From IMG/VR virus record IMGVR_UViG_3300032296_003307, positions 62,001-126,000 of that record: a stretch of DNA of 64,000 nucleotides; one strand, 5' to 3'. This document shows positions 574-58,014 of this stretch, piece by piece. How positions within the stretch are numbered: position 1 is the stretch's first letter; each line of letters begins with the position of its first letter. The position numbers and the translations under genes were made by a program. Under the pieces are notes generated by a model that worked only from the letters and a program-made list of their open reading frames with translations, did not search any database and was not told the DNA's origin.

Positions 574-603
574 TTTGGCAACTTAAAACCTTGATGGTAC
601 ATT
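574..603 (+). promoter_or_regulatory. Early/middle promoter family (T/C/G)TTGG-N19-TA(C/T)ATT, representative copy
   Basis: Same two boxes with exactly 19 nt spacing, mostly just upstream of gene starts, at about 574, 2364, 4374, 9578, 11528, 14404, 18189, 19474, 20159, 23738, 26489, 26982, 30072, 32229, 33584, 45131, 47025, 49606, 52494 and 53895; resembles the Bacteroidota sigmaA -33 TTTG / -7 TAnnTTTG promoter. Confidence 0.85.
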
Positions 604-619
604 CATCTCAATCAAGGTT

Positions 620-9560: not shown

Positions 9561-9574
9561 AAACAAATAAAGTT

Positions 9575-9601
9575 AAGCTTGGGAAACCAAGCTTTCTTTT
9601 T
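9575..9601 (+). terminator. Hairpin AAGCTTGG-GAAA-CCAAGCTT + T-tract, overlapping a TTGG-N19-TACATT promoter
   Basis: Perfect 8-bp stem with GAAA tetraloop; near-identical copies at 20155 and 26978. Confidence 0.85.
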
Positions 9602-9621
9602 TACATTATTGATTATAAATT

Positions 9622-13702: not shown

Positions 13703-13751
13703 ATGTTTTTTTATGGGGGTTATAATATTTATAACCGCCATAAAATTACAT
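13703..13751 (+). promoter_or_regulatory. 23-bp imperfect hairpin upstream of HNH containing the late promoter
   Basis: 13703-13725 pairs with 13729-13751 with 3 mismatches; TATTTATA at 13726-13733 spans loop and 3' arm; ATG at 13756. Confidence 0.75.
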
Positions 13752-13755
13752 TAAT

Positions 13756-14415
13756 ATGCCTAGTAAAGAATATATGAAAGAGTATAGGAGAAATAAAAAT
13801 CCTAAACTCAAAGAAAAAGAAGAACTTGCACAACAAGAAAAAAAACGTTGTACAAAATGTTTAGAAATAAAACCTTTTAATTCTTTCACCCCCCAAAAAG
13901 CAGGATTTATGGGATTAAAATCTCAATGTAAGGAGTGTGATTGTTTATATGATAAACATTTTCAATCTAAAACTAACTTTAGATCAGAACGAGATAAAAC
14001 AGATAAAGCTAAACAATATAGAAAAAATTATGTAGCTGAAAACTTAGACTGGTGGAGAAAATATGAAAGAGAATATAGATATAATCGTAGAAGAGAAGAT
14101 ATGTTTTTTAAAATAAAAGGAAACCTATCAGGACGACTATCTGATTTAATAAATAAAAGAAATTTATCTACTAATACTTTTGAACTTATAGGATGTGATA
14201 GAGAAACTTTTTTACAATATATTGAAAAACAATTTGTAGAAGGAATGACATGGGAAAATTATGGTTTAAAAGGATGGCATATAGATCACATAATTCCTTT
14301 ATCTTCTTTTGATTTAACTAACGAAGATGAAGTAAAGAAAGCATGTTATTATACTAATTTACAACCTCTTTGGTGGGAAGATAATTTAAAAAAAGGAAGT
14401 AAACTTGGAAATTAG
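13756..14415 (+). CDS. HNH homing endonuclease
   Basis: CTKC...CKEC zinc ribbon; WHIDHIIPLSSF...NLQPLWWEDNLKK. Confidence 0.88.
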   Translation: MPSKEYMKEYRRNKNPKLKEKEELAQQEKKRCTKCLEIKPFNSFTPQKAGFMGLKSQCKECDCLYDKHFQSKTNFRSERDKTDKAKQYRKNYVAENLDWWRKYEREYRYNRRREDMFFKIKGNLSGRLSDLINKRNLSTNTFELIGCDRETFLQYIEKQFVEGMTWENYGLKGWHIDHIIPLSSFDLTNEDEVKKACYYTNLQPLWWEDNLKKGSKLGN

Positions 14416-19459: not shown

Positions 19460-19527
19460 TTTTTTTTTTTTCATTTGGAAACCTTAATTTTCTTTCGTAT
19501 ATTTATAACAAATAAAAACTCAATAAA

Positions 19528-20130: not shown

Positions 20131-20154
20131 TTAAACAAACAAAAATCATAAATT

Positions 20155-20180
20155 AAGGCTTGGGAAACCAAGCCTTTTTT
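20155..20180 (+). terminator. Hairpin AAGGCTTGG-GAAA-CCAAGCCTT + T-tract, also the polB promoter
   Basis: 9-bp stem; TTGG at 20160-20163 lies 19 nt before TACATT at 20183. Confidence 0.88.
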
Positions 20181-20194
20181 ATTACATTGATGCT

Positions 20195-22789
20195 ATGTAT
20201 CAAGCAGTTTACTTTGATAGAGAGGAAAAACAATATTATCTAAGAGACGACAGATGGAAAGGTTTTAAAACAGTTCAACATTGGCCTACTCTTTATGTTG
20301 CTGATCCTGATGGTGACTTTGAAACACTAGAAGGTACCAAAGTATCCCCTGTTAAAAGAATGGATGATTGGAAAGATCCTAGATACTTTGAAAAAGACGT
20401 AGACAAACTTACTCGCTTACTTGTTGATTACTATTATGAATCTGATGATACACCAAAGTTTCATAATACAGTTTATTTAGATATTGAGTGTGAAATTGCC
20501 GGAGCATTAACTGAGGAAACAATTAAAGATCCTAAAGGTAAAATAACTGCTGTTGCTCTTTATGATGCTAATTCTAAAAAATATTATTGTTTACTTTTAG
20601 ATGAAAGTAAAACCTTTAAAGACATTGTTGAAGAAGATAAAGAGGTTATACCCTATGCCACTGAAAAAGAATTATTAAGTGGTTTTTTAGACAAATGGTA
20701 TGAATTAGACCCAACTATTATTACAGGTTGGAACAGTGGTTTCTTTGATATTCCTTACCTATACTATAGAATTTCTAAAGTATTAGGTGAAACACTTGCT
20801 CAAACCCTATCTCCAATAGGAAAAATTCAATTCACCCCCCAATTTCCAGATCAACCTGTTAATTTAGGAGGTATTAACCATCTTGACTATATGCTTTTGT
20901 TTAAAAAGTTTATTACAAAACAAGAGTCATCTTATCGTTTAGGTGATATTGGTAAAAAATATGCTAAATTAGAAAAAATAGAGTATCAAGGTTCACTTGA
21001 TAAATTATTTAAAGAAGATATTCATACATTTATTGAATATAACCTTCGAGACGTTGAAATTATTGTTGAGCTTGAAAAACGAATGAAGTTTATCGAACTA
21101 ACAGTTACAATTGGTCATTTATGTCATACAACTTACGAATCGATTTACTTTTCAACAGTATTAAATGAAGGTGCTATTTTAACTTACCTAAAACGTAAAG
21201 GAATAGTTTCACCTAATAAACCAACTACCTATAATCCAGCTCTAAAAACATTACAAGAGGAATATGCTGGTGGTTATTTGAAAGATCCTGTTCCTGGTTT
21301 ATATGAATGGGTTATTGATTTGGATTTTACATCTTTGTATCCCTCTATTATTCGTTCACTTAATATGGGAATTGAAACATTAGTTGGACGTGTTGTAAAC
21401 AGAGGTAAATTTGATAATCAATGGTCACTTAAAGAACTTAAAGCAATGAACCCTAGTACTATGGTTACTATTGAAAAAGTTAAAAAAGATCGTAGATTAG
21501 CCCAATCAGAAATTTCAGTAGGTGATTTAATAGAAATTATTGAAGGTAATGATTTAATTATTTCAGCACCCGGTGTTATGTTCCGTAAAGACAAATCAAG
21601 TGTTGTTTGTGAAATTCTAGCTGACTGGTTTGCTAAACGTCAAGAATATAAAAAGTTGATGAAAAAGGCATATAAAGAAGATAACGACCCTGTTATGGGA
21701 TCCTTTTATGATAGACGTCAACATGCTTATAAAATTAAATTAAATGATGTTTATGGTGTATTTGCAATTAATGGTTGGAGATACACTGATGGAAACAAAT
21801 TCATTAGTAAAGCAATTACTTTAACAGGTCAGCGCTTAACTCAAGAATCTATTAAGTTTGTAAACAATTGGATGAATGAGCAATTAGGTACAGACAATAA
21901 AGATTACATTGTTACCTCAGATACCGACTCATTATTCATTCAGGTTAAAGATTTAATTTTACAACGTAAACCTGAATTAGCTACAGCAGATCAAGAAACA
22001 ATTGTACAAGAGGTACTTAAAGTTGCTACTGAAATTCAAAAATTAGCAAATGAAAATCTACATACCATAGTACAAGAATTATTTAATGTTAAATACCCTA
22101 ATGAACCTCACTATTTTGAATTAAAACAAGAGGTTGTACTTGATAGAGGTTATTTTGCTGGTAAGCGTAGATACGCCCAACACATTGTTAATAAAGAAGG
22201 TGTACCAACAGATGAACTAGATGTTAAAGGATTGGATTTGATGAAATCAAATTTCCCACCATTGTTTAAAAAGTTTGGTGAACACATTATTAATGAAATT
22301 ATGTTTGGTAAACCTAAAACAGATATTGATAAACAAATACTTGATTTTAGAACCGAATTAAGAACAATTAATTGGAAACAAATTCTAAAACCTACTGGAT
22401 TAAAGAAAATGGGTGAATATTTGGCTTCACCTCCTAGAGCAGGTGAGGTATTTTCAAAATTAGGATTAAAATGTCCTATTAATACCAAAGCAGCTATTTA
22501 CTATAATGATATTTTAACTTTTAAAGGTTTAGATAAAAAATATCCAACATTCCAAATAGGTGATAAAATGTATATTGCTTATTTAAAAGATAATCCTTAT
22601 AGAATAGATGTTGTTGGTTTTAACGGATTTAATGACCCTCCTGAGGTAATGGAATTTATAGAAAAATACATTGATAGAGACGGTTTATTTGATTCAGTTA
22701 TGAAAAACAAATTAGAGTCATTATATTCAGATCTAGGATGGGGTGCTGTAGTACTCAATCAAAACATAAACAAGTTTTTTAAATTTTAA
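20195..22789 (+). CDS. polB: Family-B replicative DNA polymerase
   Basis: Exo I YLDIECE, Exo II GWNSGFFD, DLDFTSLYPS, KIKLNDVYG, SDTDS, KRRY. Confidence 0.95.
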   Translation: MYQAVYFDREEKQYYLRDDRWKGFKTVQHWPTLYVADPDGDFETLEGTKVSPVKRMDDWKDPRYFEKDVDKLTRLLVDYYYESDDTPKFHNTVYLDIECEIAGALTEETIKDPKGKITAVALYDANSKKYYCLLLDESKTFKDIVEEDKEVIPYATEKELLSGFLDKWYELDPTIITGWNSGFFDIPYLYYRISKVLGETLAQTLSPIGKIQFTPQFPDQPVNLGGINHLDYMLLFKKFITKQESSYRLGDIGKKYAKLEKIEYQGSLDKLFKEDIHTFIEYNLRDVEIIVELEKRMKFIELTVTIGHLCHTTYESIYFSTVLNEGAILTYLKRKGIVSPNKPTTYNPALKTLQEEYAGGYLKDPVPGLYEWVIDLDFTSLYPSIIRSLNMGIETLVGRVVNRGKFDNQWSLKELKAMNPSTMVTIEKVKKDRRLAQSEISVGDLIEIIEGNDLIISAPGVMFRKDKSSVVCEILADWFAKRQEYKKLMKKAYKEDNDPVMGSFYDRRQHAYKIKLNDVYGVFAINGWRYTDGNKFISKAITLTGQRLTQESIKFVNNWMNEQLGTDNKDYIVTSDTDSLFIQVKDLILQRKPELATADQETIVQEVLKVATEIQKLANENLHTIVQELFNVKYPNEPHYFELKQEVVLDRGYFAGKRRYAQHIVNKEGVPTDELDVKGLDLMKSNFPPLFKKFGEHIINEIMFGKPKTDIDKQILDFRTELRTINWKQILKPTGLKKMGEYLASPPRAGEVFSKLGLKCPINTKAAIYYNDILTFKGLDKKYPTFQIGDKMYIAYLKDNPYRIDVVGFNGFNDPPEVMEFIEKYIDRDGLFDSVMKNKLESLYSDLGWGAVVLNQNINKFFKF

Positions 22790-24397: not shown

Positions 24398-26014
<1,617 letters not shown>

Positions 26015-26479: not shown

Positions 26480-26543
26480 GTTTTTTTATTTGGTGACTTA
26501 AATTCTTTTTCGTATATTTATAACAAAACAAAAACTCAATAAA

Positions 26544-26951: not shown

Positions 26952-26977
26952 ATAAAACTTTATTTATATTTTAAACT

Positions 26978-27003
26978 AAGGCTTGGGAAACCAAGCCTTT
27001 TTT
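26978..27003 (+). terminator. Hairpin AAGGCTTGG-GAAA-CCAAGCCTT + T-tract, also the clamp-loader promoter
   Basis: Identical to the 20155 copy; TATATT 19 nt downstream of TTGG. Confidence 0.88.
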
Positions 27004-27017
27004 ATTATATTAATGTT

Positions 27018-27953
27018 ATGAGTAAAAAAGAACACACCCTTTGGGTTGAAAAATATCGTTCTAATACTTTAGAAAATTATGTTGGTAACGAAAATATCAA
27101 ACAAACAGTTCAAAAGTATTTAGATCAAAATGATATTCAAAACTTTTTGTTTTACGGACCTGCTGGTACTGGTAAAACTACTTTAGCAAAACTTATTGTT
27201 AACAATCTAGATTGTGATTATCTTTATATTAATGCAAGTGATGAAAGAGGTATTGACACAATTAGAGATAAAGTATCTGGTTTTGCCTCTGCTGCCTCAT
27301 TTAAACCACTTAAAGTAGTTATTTTAGATGAAGCCGATTTTATTACAATTCAGGGTCAAGCAGCACTTCGAAATGTAATTGAGACTTATTCACGTACTAC
27401 AAGATTTATTTTAACTTGTAACTTTGTTGAACGTATTATTGATCCTCTCCAATCACGTTGTCAGGTACTTAAAATTGTTCCTCCCTCTAAAAATGATATT
27501 GCAAAACACGTTTTCAATATTCTAAAACAAGAGGAAACAGAAATTCAATTAGAGGATCTAAAACTAGTAGTTAATCAGTTTTATCCTGATGTTCGTAAGA
27601 TACTTAATACCCTACAAATGGGTGCCAAAGACGGACAGATAGTTGTTGATAAAACTATATTAGTGTCTAGTAACTACAAAAACCAAATTCTCACCGAGTT
27701 ATGCAAACCATCACAAAAATCGTTTAATAACATTAGACAAATAATTGCTGATGCTGGTGTAAGTGATTTTGAGGATTTATTTAGATTCCTATACGATAAT
27801 GTAGAAAAATATGCTCCCTTAAGTGTAGGTGAGGTAGTAATTTTTATCGAAGAATATCAATACCACTCCAACTTTCGTATCGATAAAGAGATAAATCTTA
27901 TGGCTTTGATATCCAGAATTTTATCATTAATTTTAAATAAAAGAATAATATGA
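27018..27953 (+). CDS. Clamp loader AAA+ subunit (gp44/RFC-like)
   Basis: LWVEKYR, GPAGTGKTT, NASDERG, ILDEAD, LQSRC. Confidence 0.92.
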   Translation: MSKKEHTLWVEKYRSNTLENYVGNENIKQTVQKYLDQNDIQNFLFYGPAGTGKTTLAKLIVNNLDCDYLYINASDERGIDTIRDKVSGFASAASFKPLKVVILDEADFITIQGQAALRNVIETYSRTTRFILTCNFVERIIDPLQSRCQVLKIVPPSKNDIAKHVFNILKQEETEIQLEDLKLVVNQFYPDVRKILNTLQMGAKDGQIVVDKTILVSSNYKNQILTELCKPSQKSFNNIRQIIADAGVSDFEDLFRFLYDNVEKYAPLSVGEVVIFIEEYQYHSNFRIDKEINLMALISRILSLILNKRII

Positions 27954-31547: not shown

Positions 31548-31558
31548 AATGAAATCCT

Positions 31559-31600
31559 TTTGACACTCATACATATTTATAACAAAATGAGTGTCAAATG
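31559..31600 (+). promoter_or_regulatory. Perfect 12-bp hairpin over the HNH start region with the late promoter in the loop
   Basis: TTTGACACTCAT (31559-31570) pairs with ATGAGTGTCAAA (31587-31598); TATTTATA at 31574-31581; ATG at 31598. Confidence 0.82.
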
Positions 31601-32251
31601 GATTATCAAAAAATATACCACCAAATAGTAGAAAGAGCAAAAAACAGAGTGTTAGAAGGTTATAAAGAAAAACATCATATTATTCCTAAATGTTTAGGTG
31701 GTAGTAATGATAAAAATAACTTAGTGGAACTAACAGCTAGAGAACATTTTTTATGTCATATGTTACTTTGTGAAATATATCCTAACGAAAATAAATTAAG
31801 ACATGCTTTATTTTTAATGGCTATAGGAAAGAAAAAAATTAAAGAAAAAACATATGTTATAAGTTCAAGAGTATATGAAAGATTAAAATGTGAATATTCT
31901 CAAATGTTAACTGGTAAAAAACAATCTGAAGAAACAAGAAATAAGAAATCCAAATCCATGATAGGTCATTCTATGTATACTGAAGAATGGAAACAAAAAA
32001 TAAGTAAATCTAATACTGGAAGAGAAATAACATGGGGTGATAAAATATCTTCTTCTTTAAAAGGAAGAAAAATTGATTGGGATAGAGGAATAAATAAAAC
32101 TATCATACAGTATGATTTAGAAGGTAATTTTATTAAAGAATATTCCTCAATAAATGAAGCTAAAAGACAAATCAAAGGAGATATAGGAGCCATGCTTTCA
32201 GGAAGACAAAAAACTGCTGGTGGTTATATTTGGAAATTTAAAGAAAATTAA
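31598..32251 (+). CDS. HNH homing endonuclease with NUMOD3/NUMOD1-type DNA-binding modules
   Basis: EKHHIIPKCLGGSNDKNNLVELTAREHFLCH, KKQSEETRNK, IIQYDLEGNFIKEYSSINEA...GGYIWKF. Confidence 0.9.
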   Translation: MDYQKIYHQIVERAKNRVLEGYKEKHHIIPKCLGGSNDKNNLVELTAREHFLCHMLLCEIYPNENKLRHALFLMAIGKKKIKEKTYVISSRVYERLKCEYSQMLTGKKQSEETRNKKSKSMIGHSMYTEEWKQKISKSNTGREITWGDKISSSLKGRKIDWDRGINKTIIQYDLEGNFIKEYSSINEAKRQIKGDIGAMLSGRQKTAGGYIWKFKEN

Positions 32252-46732: not shown

Positions 46733-47072
46733 TTAAAAAAAGTTTATGTCAAAAACAAGTAACAAACAAAAATTAGAAACACTCAAAATTTGGTTAGACA
46801 ATCTTAAAAAGAAAAATCCAAAACCTAAAAAACAGCCTAAGTGGGTAAAAGATCTAGAATATGAAGACTAATCCAGGTGGTGCTATAGAGTTTTTTCATA
46901 GCATCCCTGATGATGTTTTAGTAAAAATAGCTCTATATGATTGGAGAGCTTTAGAATCACTATGTATTGCTCTTACTTTAGATCTTCAACTTCTTAGAGA
47001 AGAGACAGAAAGAGAAAAGAAAAATTTGGCTTCTTAAAGGATTGTTCGTACATTTATGTCATAATAAAGGTT

Positions 47073-49480: not shown

Positions 49481-49618
49481 ATGAAAGAGCAAGATAAAAT
49501 AAATGGTTTAAATAAAAGGCACGTTGCCCAAATTATAAGAAGAAACATGGTTACTCGTACTAAGCCAAGTAAAAAAGTTTACGACAGAAAAGCTTTTAAG
49601 AAAGGTTTGGAATCCTGA
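49481..49618 (+). CDS. Small basic late protein
   Basis: ATG after TATTTATA at 49468. Confidence 0.5.
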   Translation: MKEQDKINGLNKRHVAQIIRRNMVTRTKPSKKVYDRKAFKKGLES

Positions 49619-49666
49619 GATCCTGTTCGTACATTCACAATATAGAGATAATAAATAATAAAGGTT

Positions 49667-50860: not shown

Positions 50861-51088
50861 ATGAAAAAAACAAATATAGTAACCCCTATGTGGGAAAATT
50901 GCAGATCAATTATCGCAACCGGTGATATAGAACTTGCCGACCAAAAACTAATGGAATTGGTTTGGAAACTAGCCGATTACACAATGTTAGGTTATAAAGA
51001 TACCGATAAAGTTGAAGGTGTGAAAATGGAAGTTTGGAAAGAGCGATGTTGGAGTCAAATAGAAAATCTTGGTTTGCTTCCTGAATAA
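50861..51088 (+). CDS. Hypothetical protein
   Basis: AAAAGTTATG start context. Confidence 0.55.
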   Translation: MKKTNIVTPMWENCRSIIATGDIELADQKLMELVWKLADYTMLGYKDTDKVEGVKMEVWKERCWSQIENLGLLPE

Positions 51089-51107
51089 TCTTTCGTACAT
51101 TTAAGTT

Positions 51108-51422
51108 ATGGCAGAAAAAAAGGGTCACACAGAAACCATAAAATATGATTTCAATACTATTCCCGAATGTCAAGTTCAACTTGACAACGGGAAGTGGTAT
51201 AGAGCAACTCCTTTACATTTTAGATCATTCAATGGTCCAAGACGATTTGTAAGATATAAAGGTGAAGAAGTTACTTATGAGGAATACGATGGAACACTTT
51301 ATTATTGGAATACAAACATTAAGGTTAAAGAACCTAATGGTTTTGGTGTTCAATATATTGAATCAATGCCTCGAAAAACTCAAATAAGACCACATGAAAG
51401 GCATTTACTTGACTATATCTAA
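51108..51422 (+). CDS. Hypothetical protein
   Basis: AAGTTATG start context. Confidence 0.55.
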   Translation: MAEKKGHTETIKYDFNTIPECQVQLDNGKWYRATPLHFRSFNGPRRFVRYKGEEVTYEEYDGTLYYWNTNIKVKEPNGFGVQYIESMPRKTQIRPHERHLLDYI

Positions 51423-51825: not shown

Positions 51826-52515
51826 ATGAAATTCAAAGATTATGTTATGTTAATGGGTGCCAGTTTGGCACTAGGTTTTGTTTTAAGTTGGTCTATACCC
51901 TCATTTAAACCAAAAAGAGCAATCGATACACTAAAAACAGACACTACCCAAGTAGTGGTTAAAAAAGACACTACAGTCAATGTTAAAGATAAAACAGCCA
52001 TTTACATTGGAGATTCTCATACTGCCAACAATACTCAAGGTTGGCAAGTCCAACTATCAAAACTAGTGGGTTTTAAAATGACAAATGTTTCGGTTGGTGG
52101 AAAGATGACATACTGGATGTTGCAACAGGCCAAATTGCATTTGACTCCAAAATACGATTATTGTTTTATATATGGTGGGGCAAATGATATGTATTCGGTG
52201 GGTATTAAACCACAGACGGCAGTCGATAATATAAAGTCTATTGCGCGTATATGCAGGGAAAAAGAAATTGTATGTGTGGTGTTAACCGGGTTTGATGCTA
52301 AAACTTGTACCAAGTCCAATAACTTGGAATATCCGACAAGATATACAGAGTTTCAGAAATTGTTAATGAGTCAGGATATGGAAGGGGCTGTTGTTATAGA
52401 CACTAGAGTGGTGGATAGGAGAGACTGTTGGGACTATTTGTGTCATATGGCACCTAGTGGACATAAAAAGATTGCAGAAAAAATTGTGAAAGATTTGGCT
52501 TTGCAAAGGATTTGA
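51826..52515 (+). CDS. Exported SGNH/GDSL hydrolase
   Basis: N-terminal hydrophobic segment, IGDSHT, GGANDM, DYLCH. Confidence 0.75.
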   Translation: MKFKDYVMLMGASLALGFVLSWSIPSFKPKRAIDTLKTDTTQVVVKKDTTVNVKDKTAIYIGDSHTANNTQGWQVQLSKLVGFKMTNVSVGGKMTYWMLQQAKLHLTPKYDYCFIYGGANDMYSVGIKPQTAVDNIKSIARICREKEIVCVVLTGFDAKTCTKSNNLEYPTRYTEFQKLLMSQDMEGAVVIDTRVVDRRDCWDYLCHMAPSGHKKIAEKIVKDLALQRI

Positions 52516-52706
52516 CGTACATTCACGGAAATAATAAGTTATGTTTGCATTGTGGTTTAAGGGGAGTTTGGCTCTAATGTTGGGATTGAGTGTTGGGGGT
52601 GCTTTAAAAACCCGTAAGGAAATTAGAAAAGGGAATGTTCAATGGACAGCTTGGAAAGGCAAACATGATTCATTATATTTGGCTAAACAGAAAAATAAAT
52701 AAACAT

Positions 52707-53939: not shown

Positions 53940-54362
53940 ATGAAAGTAGAATATAAAAATCGTTACAATGATGTTTTTACATTTAGTAAAACAGAAGATG
54001 GAAACATCTTATGGGAAGGTAATTTTGAGTATAGCAGAAGAGGTTGGCCAAATGTTTACACTGAGGCTTATAACCAGTATGTTTTAGATGGTGGTGATAT
54101 GGATCTTAAACAGTTTAAAAAAGAGGTTCACGAGGCTGTTTATGATGAAAATGGAAAATATTTACATATGAGTGAAACAAGCCAAAAGTATTGTAAATTA
54201 GTTTATTCAGATTTAAATACAATTGATTTTGCGGATCCATCAGGTGGTCCATATATATCTTCAAATATGGATATGGGAAGATTTGATGAGGAATTTAAAG
54301 GAATGATTGTTGAAAAATTTGAACGAGTAGAAACAGGATATAAAATAATAATTAAAAAATAA
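53940..54362 (+). CDS. Hypothetical protein
   Basis: After the promoter/hairpin at 53891. Confidence 0.6.
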   Translation: MKVEYKNRYNDVFTFSKTEDGNILWEGNFEYSRRGWPNVYTEAYNQYVLDGGDMDLKQFKKEVHEAVYDENGKYLHMSETSQKYCKLVYSDLNTIDFADPSGGPYISSNMDMGRFDEEFKGMIVEKFERVETGYKIIIKK

Positions 54363-54368
54363 TTTTTG

Positions 54369-54480
54369 CAATATTTATTACCGAATGCCGAGTCGCAGCG
54401 GTAATAGTATTGAAAATAAACCAAAATACCCAAGCATGAGTAGGGAACTGCGACCCCGAAAGTGCTTGGGTTTTTTATTT
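54369..54480 (+). ncRNA. Candidate structured leader RNA: two stem-loops with a 7-bp kissing interaction, followed by a U-tract
   Basis: P1 TATTACCG/CGGTAATA; P2 CCCAAGCA/TGCTTGGG with inner GGG/CCC; loop GTCGCAG (54392-54398) is complementary to loop CTGCGAC (54448-54454); GC-rich island in AT-rich DNA. Confidence 0.7.
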
Positions 54481-54481
54481 T

Positions 54482-55123
54482 ATGAAAAAATGTACAAAAT
54501 GTAAAGAAGAAAAACAATTAACTGAGTTTAATAAAGCTAAAAATCAAAGAAATGGATTAAGTCCATGGTGTAAAGAATGTATTAATCAAAATGGTAAAGA
54601 TTGGTATCTCAAAAATAAAGAAAAACACATGGTGTATGTTCTTGAATATAGAAAAAAATGGGATAAAGAAAATAAAGAACATATTAAGAGTTATGGGAAA
54701 GAATATAGGCAAAATAATAAAGACAAAATTAGACAAAGAGAAAAACTATATAGAGAAAAAAACAACCATGTCTCCAGATGGAGAGATATTCTTAAAAGTA
54801 CTTTAAAAAGATTTCATAGAGGAAAAACAGCCTCAACCCAAACTTTATTAGGTTATTCAGCCCAAGAATTAAAAGAACATTTAGATAAATTAGGAATGAA
54901 TTGGGATACTGATCATATTGATCATATAATACCTTTGAGTTGGTTTAAGAAAAGCACCCCCATTCATGTTGTAAATGACTTAAGAAATCTTCAACCATTA
55001 TTTTCAGAAGAAAATCTAAAAAAGCATAATAAGTTTGGAGATTTAAAAGATATTTCGTATATTAATGATGTAAAAAAATATATAAAAAAAGATAAATTAA
55101 AGTTATGTTTACCTATCATTTAA
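54482..55123 (+). CDS. HNH homing endonuclease, same family as 13756
   Basis: CTKC...CKEC; DHIDHIIPLSWF...NLQPLFSEENLKK. Confidence 0.85.
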   Translation: MKKCTKCKEEKQLTEFNKAKNQRNGLSPWCKECINQNGKDWYLKNKEKHMVYVLEYRKKWDKENKEHIKSYGKEYRQNNKDKIRQREKLYREKNNHVSRWRDILKSTLKRFHRGKTASTQTLLGYSAQELKEHLDKLGMNWDTDHIDHIIPLSWFKKSTPIHVVNDLRNLQPLFSEENLKKHNKFGDLKDISYINDVKKYIKKDKLKLCLPII

Positions 55124-56431: not shown

Positions 56432-56645
56432 TCTAGACAAAAAATACATTATTGATGGTATTACTATCGATAAAACAAAAGAGGGGTATAGAGTTTTTAC
56501 AATACCAACCCAACATTTTGATATTGTTAATTTAGATGAACTAACTAACGATAGATTTGATTTGGAAATTAAAAGACAGGAACAATATAAAAAAGATAGT
56601 TCCGAATTAATTAACTTATGGTTAAATGAAAATGAACAACATTGA
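56424..56645 (+). CDS. Small hypothetical protein starting MNNLDKKY
   Basis: First 8 codons mimic the thyA start. Confidence 0.55.
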   Translation: MNNLDKKYIIDGITIDKTKEGYRVFTIPTQHFDIVNLDELTNDRFDLEIKRQEQYKKDSSELINLWLNENEQH

Positions 56646-56709
56646 TAAACAATACCAACAACTACTCAAAGACATTATTGAGTATGGTGTAGAAAAACAA
56701 GACAATTGA
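56632..56709 (+). pseudogene. Dead 5' stub of thyA (MNNIDKQYQQLLKDIIEYGVEKQDN*)
   Basis: Near-identical to 56863-56938: 2 substitutions and one 3-nt indel. Confidence 0.9.
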
Positions 56710-56714
56710 AAGTT

Positions 56715-56873
56715 ATGAATAAAGAAAGAAGAATAATTAAAGTACCTATACCAAAAGAAATTTGGGATGCTGACATGTCAATATGGAATGTACTCTTTGG
56801 AAGAAGATATATTATGAGAGCTTGGATGAATAGTATAAAAGATGTAATTAACCAAATGAGTGATGAACAATAA
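56715..56873 (+). CDS. Small hypothetical protein (52 aa) between the two thyA starts
   Basis: Translated by hand, starts MNKERRII within the junction repeat. Confidence 0.55.
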   Translation: MNKERRIIKVPIPKEIWDADMSIWNVLFGRRYIMRAWMNSIKDVINQMSDEQ

Positions 56874-58014
56874 CATTGACAAACAATACCAGCAACTACT
56901 CAAAGACATTATTGAGTATGGTGTAGAAAAACAAGACAGGACAGGAACTGGAACTAAAAGTATATTTGGTTATACCATCCGTCATAATATGAGAGATGGT
57001 TTTCCTCTTTTAACAACTAAAAAACTTCATTGGCCTTCTATAGTAAGTGAGCTTTTATGGTTTCTGCAAGGCAGAACTGACTTGAGATGGTTATTGGAAC
57101 AAGGGAATACGATTTGGGTTGGTGATTGTTATGAGAACTATTTGAATGTAGTTATGTATGAAAAACCTGATTATCTTCATGAAAAACACGGGCATCTTAA
57201 AATGAGTGTGAAAAAAGAAGATGATAATTATTTACCACTTACACAGGAGGAATTTATTAACAGAATTAAAACTGATGATAAATTTAGACATTGGGGTGAA
57301 TTAGGTCCAATTTATGGTAAACAATGGAGGGATTGGGGTGGTAGAAAGACAGATGGGTTTATTGAGTTTGAAAGTAATGGATATAGTGACCATATTAAAG
57401 GTAAAGACCAAATCCAAAATCTAATCAACGACCTTAAAACAAATCCAGACTCAAGACGATTAATGGTTAATGCTTGGAATGTTGGTGAATTAGACCAAAT
57501 GGTTCTTCCACCTTGTCATTATGGATTTCAAGTTTATACAAGAGAGCTAAGTTTAAAAGAGAGAAGACTGTTAGTTACACAAGAAATGTTCAACCAAATT
57601 TACAATGGTGGAGGTCCAGAAAGCTTATCTCATAAAGAAATAGATAAGTGGAACGTACCAACTAGAGCAATCTCTTTAATGTGGAATCAACGTTCAGTAG
57701 ATGTAGGTTTAGGTCTCCCATTCAACATAGCATCTTACGGACTATTACTTGAAATTATTGCCAAAATTACAAATATGGTTCCTGATGAATTGATTGGAAA
57801 CTTGGGTGATACACACCTTTATTTAAACCACATTGAACCAATTAAGGAACAATTAACAAGAGAACCATTTGAATTACCTAAATTGGTTCATATGAAAACA
57901 GATGAGTTTTGGAAAGAATTTAACATAAGTTTAATTGGACATTTGGACCCTAAAGATTTCACATTAGAAAACTATCAATCACACCCAACAATTAAATTAC
58001 CATTAAGTAACTAA
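56863..58014 (+). CDS. thyA: Thymidylate synthase
   Basis: DRTGTGT, FPLLTTKK, ELLWFL, LGPIYGKQWR, LPPCHY, QRSVD, GLPFNIASY, HLYLNH. Confidence 0.96.
   Translation: MNNNIDKQYQQLLKDIIEYGVEKQDRTGTGTKSIFGYTIRHNMRDGFPLLTTKKLHWPSIVSELLWFLQGRTDLRWLLEQGNTIWVGDCYENYLNVVMYEKPDYLHEKHGHLKMSVKKEDDNYLPLTQEEFINRIKTDDKFRHWGELGPIYGKQWRDWGGRKTDGFIEFESNGYSDHIKGKDQIQNLINDLKTNPDSRRLMVNAWNVGELDQMVLPPCHYGFQVYTRELSLKERRLLVTQEMFNQIYNGGGPESLSHKEIDKWNVPTRAISLMWNQRSVDVGLGLPFNIASYGLLLEIIAKITNMVPDELIGNLGDTHLYLNHIEPIKEQLTREPFELPKLVHMKTDEFWKEFNISLIGHLDPKDFTLENYQSHPTIKLPLSN

What the first reader, a model, noticed from the sequence alone, without database searches (positions are those of the whole stretch)
54369..54482. Kissing-loop structured RNA leading an HNH endonuclease gene
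Seen: a ~110-nt GC-rich element. Stem P1 (8 bp core, extendable to ~14 bp) has loop AATGCCGAGTCGCAG. Stem P2 (8 bp plus an inner 3 bp) has loop AACTGCGAC. The loops share a perfect 7-bp complement. P2 is followed by a terminator-like U-tract 11 nt before the ATG, and TATTTATT lies in the 5' arm of P1. This is far more elaborate than the other three HNH leaders. Inference: an attenuator or autoregulatory switch, a small self-cleaving or processing RNA, or an RNA partner of the nuclease. I do not recognise it as a named family.
Basis: partly seen in the sequence, partly recalled or inferred. Interest (0 to 1): 0.8.

Follow-up and report, generated by a model that had tools for sequence, protein, structure and literature searches.

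The report
Kissing-loop leader RNA of homing-endonuclease cassettes
A folded RNA of about 100 nt, held together by a loop-loop "kiss" and ending in a transcription stop signal, forms the front end of a mobile nuclease-gene cassette in a lake phage; it belongs to an RNA family that I found in no database or paper, and that sits ahead of three unrelated kinds of homing endonuclease genes and of some phage replication-region genes.

Summary
The element (window 54363-54481) is one member of an RNA family of at least 100 copies, seen only in viral and metagenome contigs and matching no Rfam 15 family. Covariation proves the kiss: at least 20 different 7-nt loop sequences each have a matching partner about 44 nt away, and 98% of cells are paired. 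The second hairpin has an outer stem, an invariant internal loop with the AGUA/GAA sarcin-ricin sequence, a covarying 3-bp helix and the kissing loop. A U-tract always follows it, and the start codon comes 3-11 nt later. Downstream genes are zinc-finger HNH, GIY-YIG or NUMOD4-HNH homing endonucleases, or DUF6291, primase-like or HTH genes. This argues against an RNA partner of one nuclease and against autoregulation. Lake-water DNA contigs contain the empty site (54360 joined to 55100). The RNA is therefore the 5' end of a mobile cassette: promoter-like box, RNA with terminator, HNH gene, embedded promoter for the next gene. My best reading is a portable promoter-proximal attenuator or insulator in which the kiss pre-organises an oversized terminator. 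This mechanism is inferred, not shown. The kiss evolves much faster than the rest of the RNA, and I cannot explain why. A P4-CI-like specificity code is the most novel reading still open.

The parts
54363..55101 (+). Whole mobile cassette: leader RNA, HNH gene and embedded promoter. The boundary is ambiguous by 2 nt.
   Evidence: Lake-water DNA contigs in runs X2 and X4 join 54360 to 55100, skipping 739 nt with 2 nt of microhomology. That leaves stop codon TAA followed by GTTATG of the next gene. A parallel case is L344 against L345.
54371..54381 (+). Promoter-like box ATATTTATTAC (a -7/-10 type element), overlapping the 5' arm of the long P1.
   Evidence: Seven exact copies of ATATTTATWAC occur in the window, all on the + strand. 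Five lie 14-21 nt before an ATG (gene starts 13756, 19528, 26544, 31598, 48165), one is intergenic just after the ORF ending 44364, and one is here. The box resembles the repeated motif TTTGG-N19-GTATATTTAT. Function is inferred.
54370..54411 (+). P1 hairpin. Long form: 54370-54383 with 54399-54411. Short form: 54387-54390 with 54399-54402, with an 8-nt loop.
   Evidence: Fold. The three loop-proximal pairs are 99% paired, with changes on both sides. RNAalifold predicts the same helix.
54392..54398 (+). K1, the kissing heptamer GUCGCAG in the P1 loop.
   Evidence: 98.1% of cells paired, and 5 of 7 pairs show changes on both sides.
54403..54428 (+). A/U-rich linker.
   Evidence: Variable in sequence. 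The K1-K2 spacing is 37-49 nt, mode 44.
54429..54470 (+). P2: outer stem 54429-54436 with 54463-54470; internal loop UGAGUA (54437-54442) opposite GAAAG (54458-54462); inner helix 54443-54445 with 54455-54457.
   Evidence: UGAGUA and GAAAG are invariant in A1. The outer stem is 92% paired and the inner helix 100% paired, with G-C replaced by A-U in 21 of 45 sequences. AGUA/GAA is a sarcin-ricin motif sequence (PMC1865062); that the loop adopts this fold is inference.
54448..54454 (+). K2, the kissing heptamer CUGCGAC in the P2 loop, preceded by an invariant AA.
54471..54481 (+). U-tract of the terminator-like P2.
   Evidence: A T-run of 5-9 is present in every member, directly after the outer stem. 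Ordinary terminators of this phage have the same form.
54482..55123 (+). HNH / endonuclease VII-like homing endonuclease gene (213 aa).
   Evidence: phrog_1035 at E = 4e-22, with weak Pfam HNH. Present or absent in natural populations.
55034..55063 (+). Promoter-like motif (TTTGG-N17-TATATTAA) embedded in the 3' end of the HNH ORF, ahead of the next gene (ATG 55105).
   Evidence: Repeat families D1 and D4. It lies inside the inserted segment. The same kind of motif occurs in 11 of 35 cassettes, against 5% of background windows.

Best explanation
The element is a cis-acting, promoter-proximal leader RNA that forms the 5' end of a free-standing homing-endonuclease cassette.

Transcripts enter from the upstream gene or start at the box at 54371-54381. 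They first make P1, which displays the heptamer K1. When the P2 loop emerges, K1 pairs with K2. Together with the 3-bp helix and the AGUA/GAA internal loop, this pairing ties up the 26-nt interior of P2. The 8-bp outer stem can then close next to the U-tract and act as an intrinsic terminator.

Most transcripts therefore stop 11 nt before the HNH start codon. The nuclease is made only from read-through, and upstream transcription is insulated from the insert. A promoter embedded in the 3' end of the HNH ORF restarts transcription for the next phage gene.

Shown: the fold, the kiss, the conserved U-tract, the fixed position before start codons, the mobility of the cassette, and the variety of genes served. 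Inferred: termination itself, the helping role of the kiss, and the activity of both promoters.
For: 1. Structure. Five helices, including the kiss, covary: 92% of cells are paired against 72% in shuffles (0 of 500 shuffles reach it), slid controls give 30-38%, and the kiss is 98% paired with up to 5 pair types per position. RNAalifold agrees.
2. Terminator form. The outer stem plus T-run is invariant in all members and resembles this phage's ordinary terminators. Nearest-neighbour energy is -20.8 kcal/mol for P2, -12.0 if its interior is left open, and -10.5 for the kiss.
3. Position. The ATG lies 3-11 nt after the T-run in 44 of the 45 distinct copies where a downstream ORF was found. About 35 of 80 DUF6291 loci carry the RNA ending about 10 nt before that gene's ATG, with a canonical TAnnTTTG box just 5' of K1.
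4. Promoter box.
5. Cassette. Empty site in lake DNA; L344 against L345; at least 22 unrelated upstream gene families, with the RNA starting within about 13 nt of their stop codons in most copies.
6. Embedded promoter. 55034-55063, and enrichment of 11 of 35 against 5%.
7. Precedent. In T4, homing endonuclease genes carry terminators, embedded promoters for downstream genes and regulatory RNA hairpins (PMC2988022).
Against: - No transcript ends were seen. The only RNA-library evidence is one 248-nt contig from a relative. It spans the element and runs on into the gene, which shows read-through at best and may be DNA carry-over.
- A plain hairpin would terminate as well, so the elaborate and conserved interior and the fast-evolving kiss are not explained by termination alone.
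- If the box is the promoter, the 5' arm of the long P1 is not transcribed, yet some members have perfect 9-bp long forms.
- This phage also places ordinary terminator-like hairpins directly before essential genes such as the DNA polymerase gene (family D3). Such hairpins may therefore be leaky or have another role here.
Confidence: 0.55

Rival explanations
1. An RNA-coded specificity (immunity-like) system. The terminated leader accumulates, and K1 or K2 also pairs in trans with nascent leaders that carry the same code. This would set termination of the downstream nuclease or replication gene, as P4 CI RNA does with seqA and seqC. The variable heptamer would be an address that keeps different cassettes or phages from cross-regulating.
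For: - The kiss is hypervariable. Leaders with 2-3 differences in about 70 other positions differ at 6 of 14 kiss positions, always compensated (p = 2e-4 to 5e-4).
- At least 20 codes sit on nearly identical scaffolds.
- Sub-classes precede primase-like and replication-region genes.
- P4 precedent: (PMC4825925).
Against: - Both partners lie on the same molecule at a tightly kept spacing of 37-49 nt. This favours pairing in cis and makes a trans partner redundant.
- Only one copy was found per window or locus.
- There is no evidence for a stable RNA product.
Confidence: 0.17
2. A stand-alone stable small RNA gene (its own promoter, two hairpins, a terminator) with a trans function unrelated to the downstream gene, for example host takeover or anti-defence. 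Endonuclease genes would merely travel with it or home next to it.
For: - The architecture from promoter-like box to terminator is that of an sRNA gene.
- In L214 it lies inside a tRNA gene cluster.
- The structure is compact and highly ordered.
Against: - It is always immediately 5' of a start codon (3-11 nt in all but one copy) and never seen alone.
- It is absent from the endonuclease-free allele.
- The most variable part is the only long single-stranded candidate for target pairing, and that part is paired internally.
Confidence: 0.12
3. A sensor leader: a riboswitch or a protein-binding antitermination or termination site. A ligand or a phage or host protein would bind the AGUA/GAA loop or the kissing junction and switch read-through.
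For: The invariant nucleotides are concentrated in the internal loop and the purines flanking the kiss. Sarcin-ricin modules are frequent protein-binding sites (established knowledge).
Against: - No alternative, mutually exclusive helix was found.
- The associated genes share no metabolic theme.
- No Rfam riboswitch matches.
Confidence: 0.1
4. A small self-cleaving or processing RNA, or a DNA-level signal such as a cruciform or recombination site.
For: Many conserved nucleotides in a small fold. A sub-threshold Pistol hit. The minus strand folds equally well.
Against: - The Pistol hit scores 23 bits against a threshold of 34.5, lies on the antisense strand and fits only the 5' half of the model.
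- The T-run is conserved on one strand only.
- G.U wobbles occur in the kiss (L319, L333) and G.U outnumbers A.C by 20 to 6.
- Protein recognition of at least 20 different heptamers is implausible.
Confidence: 0.04

Closest known systems
Regulatory architecture of T4-type homing endonuclease genes (I-TevI-III, segB, mobE, segF, segG; review PMC2988022)
   Same: - RNA structures directly upstream of the endonuclease gene.
- Intrinsic terminators that limit endonuclease transcripts.
- Promoters for the downstream phage gene embedded in the endonuclease ORF.
- A phage promoter placed inside a hairpin arm or loop. Another endonuclease gene in this window, at 31598, shows that classic form.
   Different: - T4 hairpins are simple, gene-specific, and act by hiding the ribosome-binding site.
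- Here one conserved two-hairpin kissing RNA is shared by three endonuclease families in many phages.
- It does not cover the start codon, and it ends in a U-tract.
Satellite phage P4 CI RNA with seqA/seqC, and the P1/P7 c4 antisense RNAs (P4: PMC4825925; P1/P7: own knowledge)
   Same: Short complementary RNA segments within the leader of replication or early genes cause premature termination or repression. Their sequence sets specificity and differs between relatives.
   Different: - P4 CI is processed and acts in trans on two targets.
- There is no sequence or Rfam similarity.
- Here both partners are hairpin loops in one roughly 100-nt unit at fixed spacing, and one of them lies inside the terminator hairpin itself.
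PeSL mobile regulatory cassettes of T4-type phages (PMC2839356, found)
   Same: Conserved promoter plus stem-loop modules that flank and travel with accessory ORFs in T4-like genomes.
   Different: - PeSLs are repeated many times per genome and mediate recombination between copies.
- This RNA is single-copy in the window, lies only on the 5' side, and has a tertiary fold supported by covariation.
Countertranscript-driven attenuation in plasmids pT181 and pIP501, and ColE1 RNA I/RNA II kissing (own knowledge)
   Same: A loop-loop kiss of about 7 nt decides whether a leader terminator forms. The loop sequence defines incompatibility or specificity and diverges quickly.
   Different: Those kisses form between two RNAs transcribed from opposite strands. 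Here both loops are on the same strand and molecule.
HEARO / IscB omega RNA (HNH-endonuclease-associated RNA; own knowledge; no Rfam family reached threshold)
   Same: A structured RNA next to an HNH nuclease gene.
   Different: HEARO is about 300 nt and guides a RuvC-HNH protein. Here the protein is a 213-aa EndoVII-like HNH, and the RNA also serves GIY-YIG and non-nuclease genes.

Membership tests
Any Rfam 15 family | Score at or above the family's gathering threshold | tested here: not met
   No hits in the whole window. In 20 member loci only tRNAs were found. At permissive E-values nothing is consistent.
Pistol ribozyme (RF02679) | Full model match on the transcribed strand, including the P2/P3 core and the G-U cleavage site | tested here: not met
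   23.3 and 20.1 bits against a threshold of 34.5. The hit is antisense to the box plus P1, only the 5' half aligns, and it appears only in L290 and L328.
Intrinsic (rho-independent) terminator | G+C-rich stem immediately followed by a U-tract on the transcribed strand | tested here: met
   An outer stem of about 8-10 bp and a T-run of 5-9 in all members.
Intrinsic (rho-independent) terminator | Compact hairpin with a short loop (3-8 nt) | tested here: not met
   The stem encloses a structured 26-nt module. The consensus scan finds only a window-specific mini-hairpin. Other terminators of this phage have 4-nt loops.
Intrinsic (rho-independent) terminator | Transcripts end in the U-tract | not testable with these tools
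   Only one RNA-library contig of a relative was available, and it has no end information.
T4-type endonuclease translational hairpin | [quoted passage not shown] | tested here: not met
   The start codon lies 11 nt 3' of P2. Only 7 of 62 genes in the window have a Shine-Dalgarno core.
T4-type endonuclease translational hairpin | A phage promoter inside the hairpin, so that its own transcripts lack the 5' arm | tested here: inconclusive
   The box at 54371-54381 lies in the 5' arm of the long P1. Promoter activity and the transcription start site are unknown.
P4 CI-type RNA immunity | Complementary segments in the leader of a replication or early operon linked to termination | tested here: met
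   K1/K2 complementarity with covariation. Leaders of DUF6291, primase-like and HTH genes carry the RNA.
P4 CI-type RNA immunity | A processed stable RNA that acts in trans and defines immunity | not testable with these tools
   No expression data. The fixed cis spacing argues against a need for trans action.
PeSL mobile regulatory cassette | Multiple near-identical copies per genome flanking variable ORFs | tested here: not met
   One copy in 64 kb and one per fetched locus.
Sarcin-ricin / loop E (bulged-G) module | AGUA opposite GAA, next to a Watson-Crick helix | tested here: met
   UG-AGUA and GAA-AG are invariant in the homing-endonuclease class, and nAGUA/GAAAG is kept in nearly all of the DUF6291 class. 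The motif sequence is listed in PMC1865062. L344 is an exception, with UGAUA/UUGA.
Sarcin-ricin / loop E (bulged-G) module | The S-turn three-dimensional geometry | not testable with these tools
   No RNA 3D tool or probing data were available.
Riboswitch | Conserved ligand pocket, an alternative expression-platform helix and a coherent gene set | tested here: not met
   No alternative pairing. The genes are heterogeneous. No Rfam riboswitch hit.
Free-standing homing endonuclease cassette | Presence/absence polymorphism at a precise intergenic site in otherwise collinear genomes | tested here: met
   Joint 54360 to 55100 in two lake metagenomes. L344 and L345 are about 89-93% identical on both sides and differ only in the insert.

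The most novel reading that the evidence does not exclude
The 7-nt kiss is a rapidly diversifying RNA address code. Each cassette or phage lineage has its own K1/K2 pair, so that termination control of its nuclease or replication gene responds only to RNAs with the same code. This would be an RNA-only specificity or immunity system, carried by homing-endonuclease cassettes and by the early regions of aquatic phages whose hosts are probably Bacteroidota. It would be analogous in logic to P4 CI or plasmid incompatibility RNAs, but built as a single kissing-loop terminator module.
Probability: 0.18. Interest if true: 0.9.

Novelty: new variant of a known kind. Interest (0 to 1): 0.75.

Why it matters
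Homing endonuclease genes must be expressed just enough to spread without harming the phage they live in. Until now the known controls, from T4, were simple gene-specific hairpins, terminators and embedded promoters.

This finding gives three new things:
- A conserved, portable RNA module with a tertiary contact proven by covariation. Three unrelated endonuclease families and several phage early genes share it, which implies that regulatory RNA leaders are exchanged as modules among mobile genes.
- A natural terminator whose loop has been expanded into a folded domain docked to an upstream hairpin. This is a compact model for how tertiary structure tunes termination.
- A clear case of accelerated, always-compensated evolution of a 7-bp RNA contact. 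It makes the question of whether such contacts carry specificity information directly testable with a handful of mutants.

It also adds a well-supported family to the thin catalogue of structured RNAs from uncultured aquatic phages.

Tried and rejected
- **Known RNA family.** The Rfam gathering scan of the window and of 20 member loci, and permissive scans of several members, gave nothing. The exceptions were chance-level sRNA and terminator look-alikes and a sub-threshold antisense Pistol hit.
- **Cultured relatives.** blastn of the window region and of a consensus-like member against 50,697 phage records found no match. The DNA polymerase is at most 33% identical to any isolate.
- **Cellular genomes.** Eight pattern hits in 185,579 species genomes were all rejected by the covariance model.
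- **Other copies in the window.** None, so the other endonuclease genes do not use it.
- **A third partner for the heptamers (switch model).** No occurrence within 400 nt upstream or 1200 nt downstream in 45 members.
- **RNA partner or autoregulation by the HNH.** Rejected because of the variety of downstream genes.
- **Transcript evidence.** One metatranscriptome run holds a relative's copy as a contig with different flanks. It is uninformative about RNA ends.
- **Literature.** No paper links kissing loops, or any RNA motif, to free-standing endonuclease genes of this kind. DUF6291 is not mentioned anywhere.
- **P1 register.** Both the long (11-15-nt loop) and short (8-nt loop) forms occur as perfect helices in different members, and I could not choose between them (by eye on the listings).
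Full report
**1. The observation**

The intergenic stretch 54363-54481 lies between a 140-aa ORF (53940-54362) and an HNH / endonuclease VII-like ORF (54482-55123; phrog_1035 at E = 4e-22).
- P1 has its 5' arm at 54370-54383, its 3' arm at 54399-54411 and a 15-nt loop.
- P2 has an 8-bp outer stem (54429-54436 with 54463-54470) and an inner 3-bp helix (54443-54445 with 54455-54457).
- A T-run starts 11 nt before the ATG.
- The heptamer at 54392-54398 and its reverse complement at 54448-54454 are the only two occurrences in the 64-kb window.

The fold is far better than shuffles: -40.9 against -22.0 +/- 3.2 kcal/mol, z = -5.9. The opposite strand folds as well. The strand is therefore decided by other evidence, given in section 2.

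**2. It is a family, and the kiss is real**

Exact-pattern scans first found two relatives, L027 and L103. They then found a variant with a different but again self-complementary loop pair, L153-L155. A looser pattern followed: the internal-loop motifs, a stem and a T-run. It was run over viral contigs, species genomes and metagenomes. Together with a script that required the helices, it gave 65 instances, 47 of them distinct. They carry 19 different loop sequences, each with an exact reverse complement 33-45 nt upstream.

A covariance model built from these finds:
- one copy in the window (83.5 bits);
- 66 copies in the fetched loci;
- none in the eight species-genome pattern hits.

The family has therefore been seen only in viral and metagenome contigs from lakes, coastal water and the sea.

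On the model-fitted alignment, 92.2% of cells form pairs against 72% in column shuffles (0 of 500 shuffles reach it) and 30-38% when partners are slid.
- The kiss is 98.1% paired. Five of its seven pairs change on both sides, with up to five pair types at one position.
- The inner helix is 100% paired (G-C 24, A-U 21 at its middle pair).
- The outer stem of P2 is 92% paired.
- The three loop-proximal pairs of P1 are 99% paired.

RNAalifold independently returns the same P1 and P2, plus an invariant U.G pair closing the internal loop.

Three facts place the structure in RNA of the gene strand: G.U wobbles within the kiss (L319, L333), an excess of G.U over A.C of 20 to 6, and the one-sided T-run.

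No Rfam 15 family matches the window copy or any other member. A Pistol hit is sub-threshold, antisense and partial. Literature searches found no description.

**3. Anatomy of the family**

From 5' to 3':
- **A promoter-like box.** In the window this is ATATTTATTAC at 54371-54381. The 11-mer ATATTTATWAC has seven exact copies in the window, all on the coding strand. Five lie 14-21 nt before a start codon, including two other endonuclease genes at 13756 and 31598, one is intergenic, and one is the copy here. The box matches the -7 part of the window's repeated TTTGG-N19-GTATATTTAT motif. In the divergent sub-classes the corresponding box is a perfect TAnnTTTG, the Bacteroidota -7 consensus (own knowledge), 5-10 nt before K1.
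- **K1.** It is usually the 3' part of an 8-nt hairpin loop (A plus the heptamer). In the DUF6291 class it is near the 5' end and not in a hairpin, which gives an H-type pseudoknot.
- **An A/U-rich linker.** The K1-K2 spacing is narrowly kept at 37-49 nt, mode 44.
- **P2.** It has an outer stem and an internal loop UG-AGUA opposite GAA-AG, invariant in the endonuclease class. AGUA/GAA is a canonical sarcin-ricin (bulged-G) sequence (PMC1865062). That the loop adopts this fold is my inference. Then come a covarying 3-4-bp helix and a loop of AA plus K2.
- **A T-run of 5-9.**
- **The start codon**, 3-11 nt further on in all but one copy.

**4. Genes served**

Downstream ORFs of 45 distinct copies fall into these groups:
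- 22 zinc-finger HNH proteins of the window's type (HNH_4 / EndoVII-like);
- 10 GIY-YIG proteins with NUMOD1/NUMOD3;
- 3 NUMOD4 plus HNH_3 proteins;
- DUF6291 proteins;
- a BT4734-like/PriCT primase-like protein;
- an HTH_36 protein;
- two unknowns.

Fetching 80 loci by the DUF6291 protein showed that about 35 carry the RNA ending about 10 nt before that gene. This holds down to about 55% protein identity, and the kiss pairs still covary. There are thus two contexts. In one the RNA is a vertically inherited leader of early or replication-region genes in siphophage-like contigs; NinG and DNA methylases lie nearby. In the other it is the leader of mobile endonuclease genes. This variety rules out an RNA partner of, or autoregulation by, one nuclease family.

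**5. The RNA is part of a mobile cassette**

Of 27 relatives that carry the upstream gene, only one (L344) has such an RNA after it, besides the window's close kin L316, L027 and L278.

L344 and L345 are about 89-93% identical on both sides. Their homology stops at the stop codon of the upstream gene and resumes at the next gene's start. L344 holds the RNA plus a NUMOD4-HNH gene (594 bp), whereas L345 holds an unrelated 197-aa ORF.

For the window itself, contigs from two lake-water DNA runs join 54360 to 55100, skipping 739 nt with 2 nt of microhomology. This leaves TAA followed directly by GTTATG of the next gene, which is the tight gene spacing usual in this phage.

The insert therefore runs from the first base of the leader to within the last codons of the HNH ORF. 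It includes the promoter-like motif at 55034-55063 that faces the next gene. Such a motif lies in the last ~100 nt of the endonuclease ORF, or just after its stop, in 11 of 35 cassettes, against 5% of background windows.

Across the family the upstream genes fall into at least 22 unrelated families, and the RNA begins within about 13 nt of their stop codon in most copies. One upstream gene family can carry different endonucleases and different kiss codes. In L214 the cassette sits in a tRNA gene cluster, as T4 segB does (PMC2330249, listed).

**6. Mechanism**

The arrangement is a promoter-like box, then about 95 nt of RNA ending in a hairpin and U-tract, then the start codon. That is the arrangement of a promoter-proximal attenuator. 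P2's outer stem and U-tract look like this phage's plain terminators, but the stem encloses 26 nt. Nearest-neighbour energies are -12.0 kcal/mol for the outer stem with an open interior and -20.8 for P2 as folded. The kiss adds about -10.5.

I infer that the kiss, the small helix and the AGUA/GAA loop pre-organise the interior, so that the terminator stem closes in time. The result would be that:
- most transcripts end before the endonuclease gene;
- upstream transcription is insulated from the insert;
- the embedded promoter restores expression of the next gene.

This follows principles documented for T4 endonuclease genes: terminators in mobE and segF, embedded promoters in segG and others, and hairpin-plus-late-promoter control (PMC2988022).

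Translation is probably not blocked directly. The start codon is 11 nt beyond the stem, and this phage hardly uses Shine-Dalgarno sequences (7 of 62 genes).

None of the functional steps has been observed. The single RNA-library contig, from a relative, spans the element and continues into the gene, and it may be DNA carry-over. I give this model 0.55.

**7. What the model does not explain**

The kiss evolves much faster than the scaffold. Pairs of leaders that differ at 2-3 of about 70 other positions differ at 6 of 14 kiss positions, always compensated (Fisher p = 2e-4 to 5e-4). A contig in run X4 shares the window's T-run and HNH start but has a different code. No third copy of either heptamer lies nearby, so this is not a two-state switch.

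Possible reasons:
- selection for orthogonal codes, as with P4 CI/seqA-seqC, P1/P7 c4 or plasmid copy-control RNAs (own knowledge);
- template-switch correction of a quasi-palindrome (own knowledge);
- merely relaxed sequence constraint.

The fixed cis spacing argues for an intramolecular contact, but it does not exclude additional trans pairing.

**8. Setting**

The window is part of a 268,739-bp viral contig (L100 and L338 are identical pieces).
- It is 30% G+C, and nearly all long ORFs lie on one strand.
- It encodes a T4-type family B DNA polymerase, a UvsX-like recombinase, DnaB, RNR, GroEL and thymidylate synthase.
- Its DNA polymerase is at most 33% identical to that of any isolate.
- It recurs in many lake-water metagenomes.

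The TTTG / TAnnTTT(A/G) promoter-like motifs, the lack of Shine-Dalgarno sequences and the Bacteroides-type primase domain in one sub-class suggest Bacteroidota hosts. This is inference only.

**9. Verdict**

As a kind of system it is a new variant of known things, namely RNA control of homing endonuclease genes and terminator-containing leaders. It has two unusual properties: it is portable across unrelated mobile genes, and its tertiary contact is hypervariable.

Noticed in passing
window 56631-56938: The first ~70 nt of the thymidylate synthase gene (56869-56938) are duplicated at 96% identity at 56635-56704. There they form a 25-codon stub ending in a stop. Between the two copies lies a 55-aa ORF (56706-56873) whose start region belongs to a three-copy repeat (55670, 56049, 56690). 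This looks like a small ORF inserted into the 5' end of thyA, with duplication of the target so that thyA stays intact.
   Followed up: partly
window 56860-58014: The thymidylate synthase ORF is 384 aa, whereas the Pfam model of about 264 positions is spanned end to end. That implies insertions totalling roughly 100 aa. Rfam gave no group I intron hit.
   Followed up: no
window 31555-31600: Another homing endonuclease gene (31598-32251, phrog_655) has the classic T4-style control. An 11-bp hairpin ends directly at the start codon, and its loop carries the promoter-like box ATATTTATAAC.
   Followed up: partly
window 13715-13756: The EndoVII-like HNH gene at 13756 is preceded by a short palindrome (GGTTATAA/TTATAACC) that contains the same box. 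The kissing RNA is absent.
   Followed up: partly
window 575-611, 19466-19518, 26481-26533, 47017-47062, 49598-49635, 51073-51109, 52486-52531, 55026-55071: A repeated promoter-like motif TTTGG-N19-(C)GTA(T/C)ATTTAT lies just upstream of many genes. It is close to the Bacteroidota TTTG / TAnnTTTG promoter form. The same consensus recurs in unrelated contigs that carry the RNA family.
   Followed up: partly
window 9568-9616, 20149-20197, 26972-27020: Near-identical terminator-like hairpins (GGCTTGGG-AAA-CCAAGCC plus a T-run) sit only about 14 nt before start codons, including that of the DNA polymerase gene (ATG 20195). Expression of those genes must involve read-through, or a promoter overlapping the T-run region.
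   Followed up: no
L290:1159-1225 (+) and L328:854-890 (+): Sub-threshold Pistol ribozyme hits (23.3 and 20.1 bits; gathering threshold 34.5) on the strand antisense to the box plus P1 of the leader. Only the 5' half of the model fits. I take them as chance.
   Followed up: yes
L325:5083-5188, and L371:133-236: Natural leaders with an imperfect kiss. L325 combines K1 of one code with K2 of another, leaving 5 of 7 pairs, and looks recombinant. L371 has one mismatch.
   Followed up: partly
L344:3531-3631: A divergent member whose internal loop is UGAUA/UUGA instead of UGAGUA/GAAAG. It keeps the kiss, the inner helix, the U-tract and a perfect TATATTTG box, so the AGUA/GAA module is not universal.
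   Followed up: partly
window 24404-26014: The phage encodes a full-length GroEL-type chaperonin (phrog_5725, E = 1e-160).
   Followed up: no
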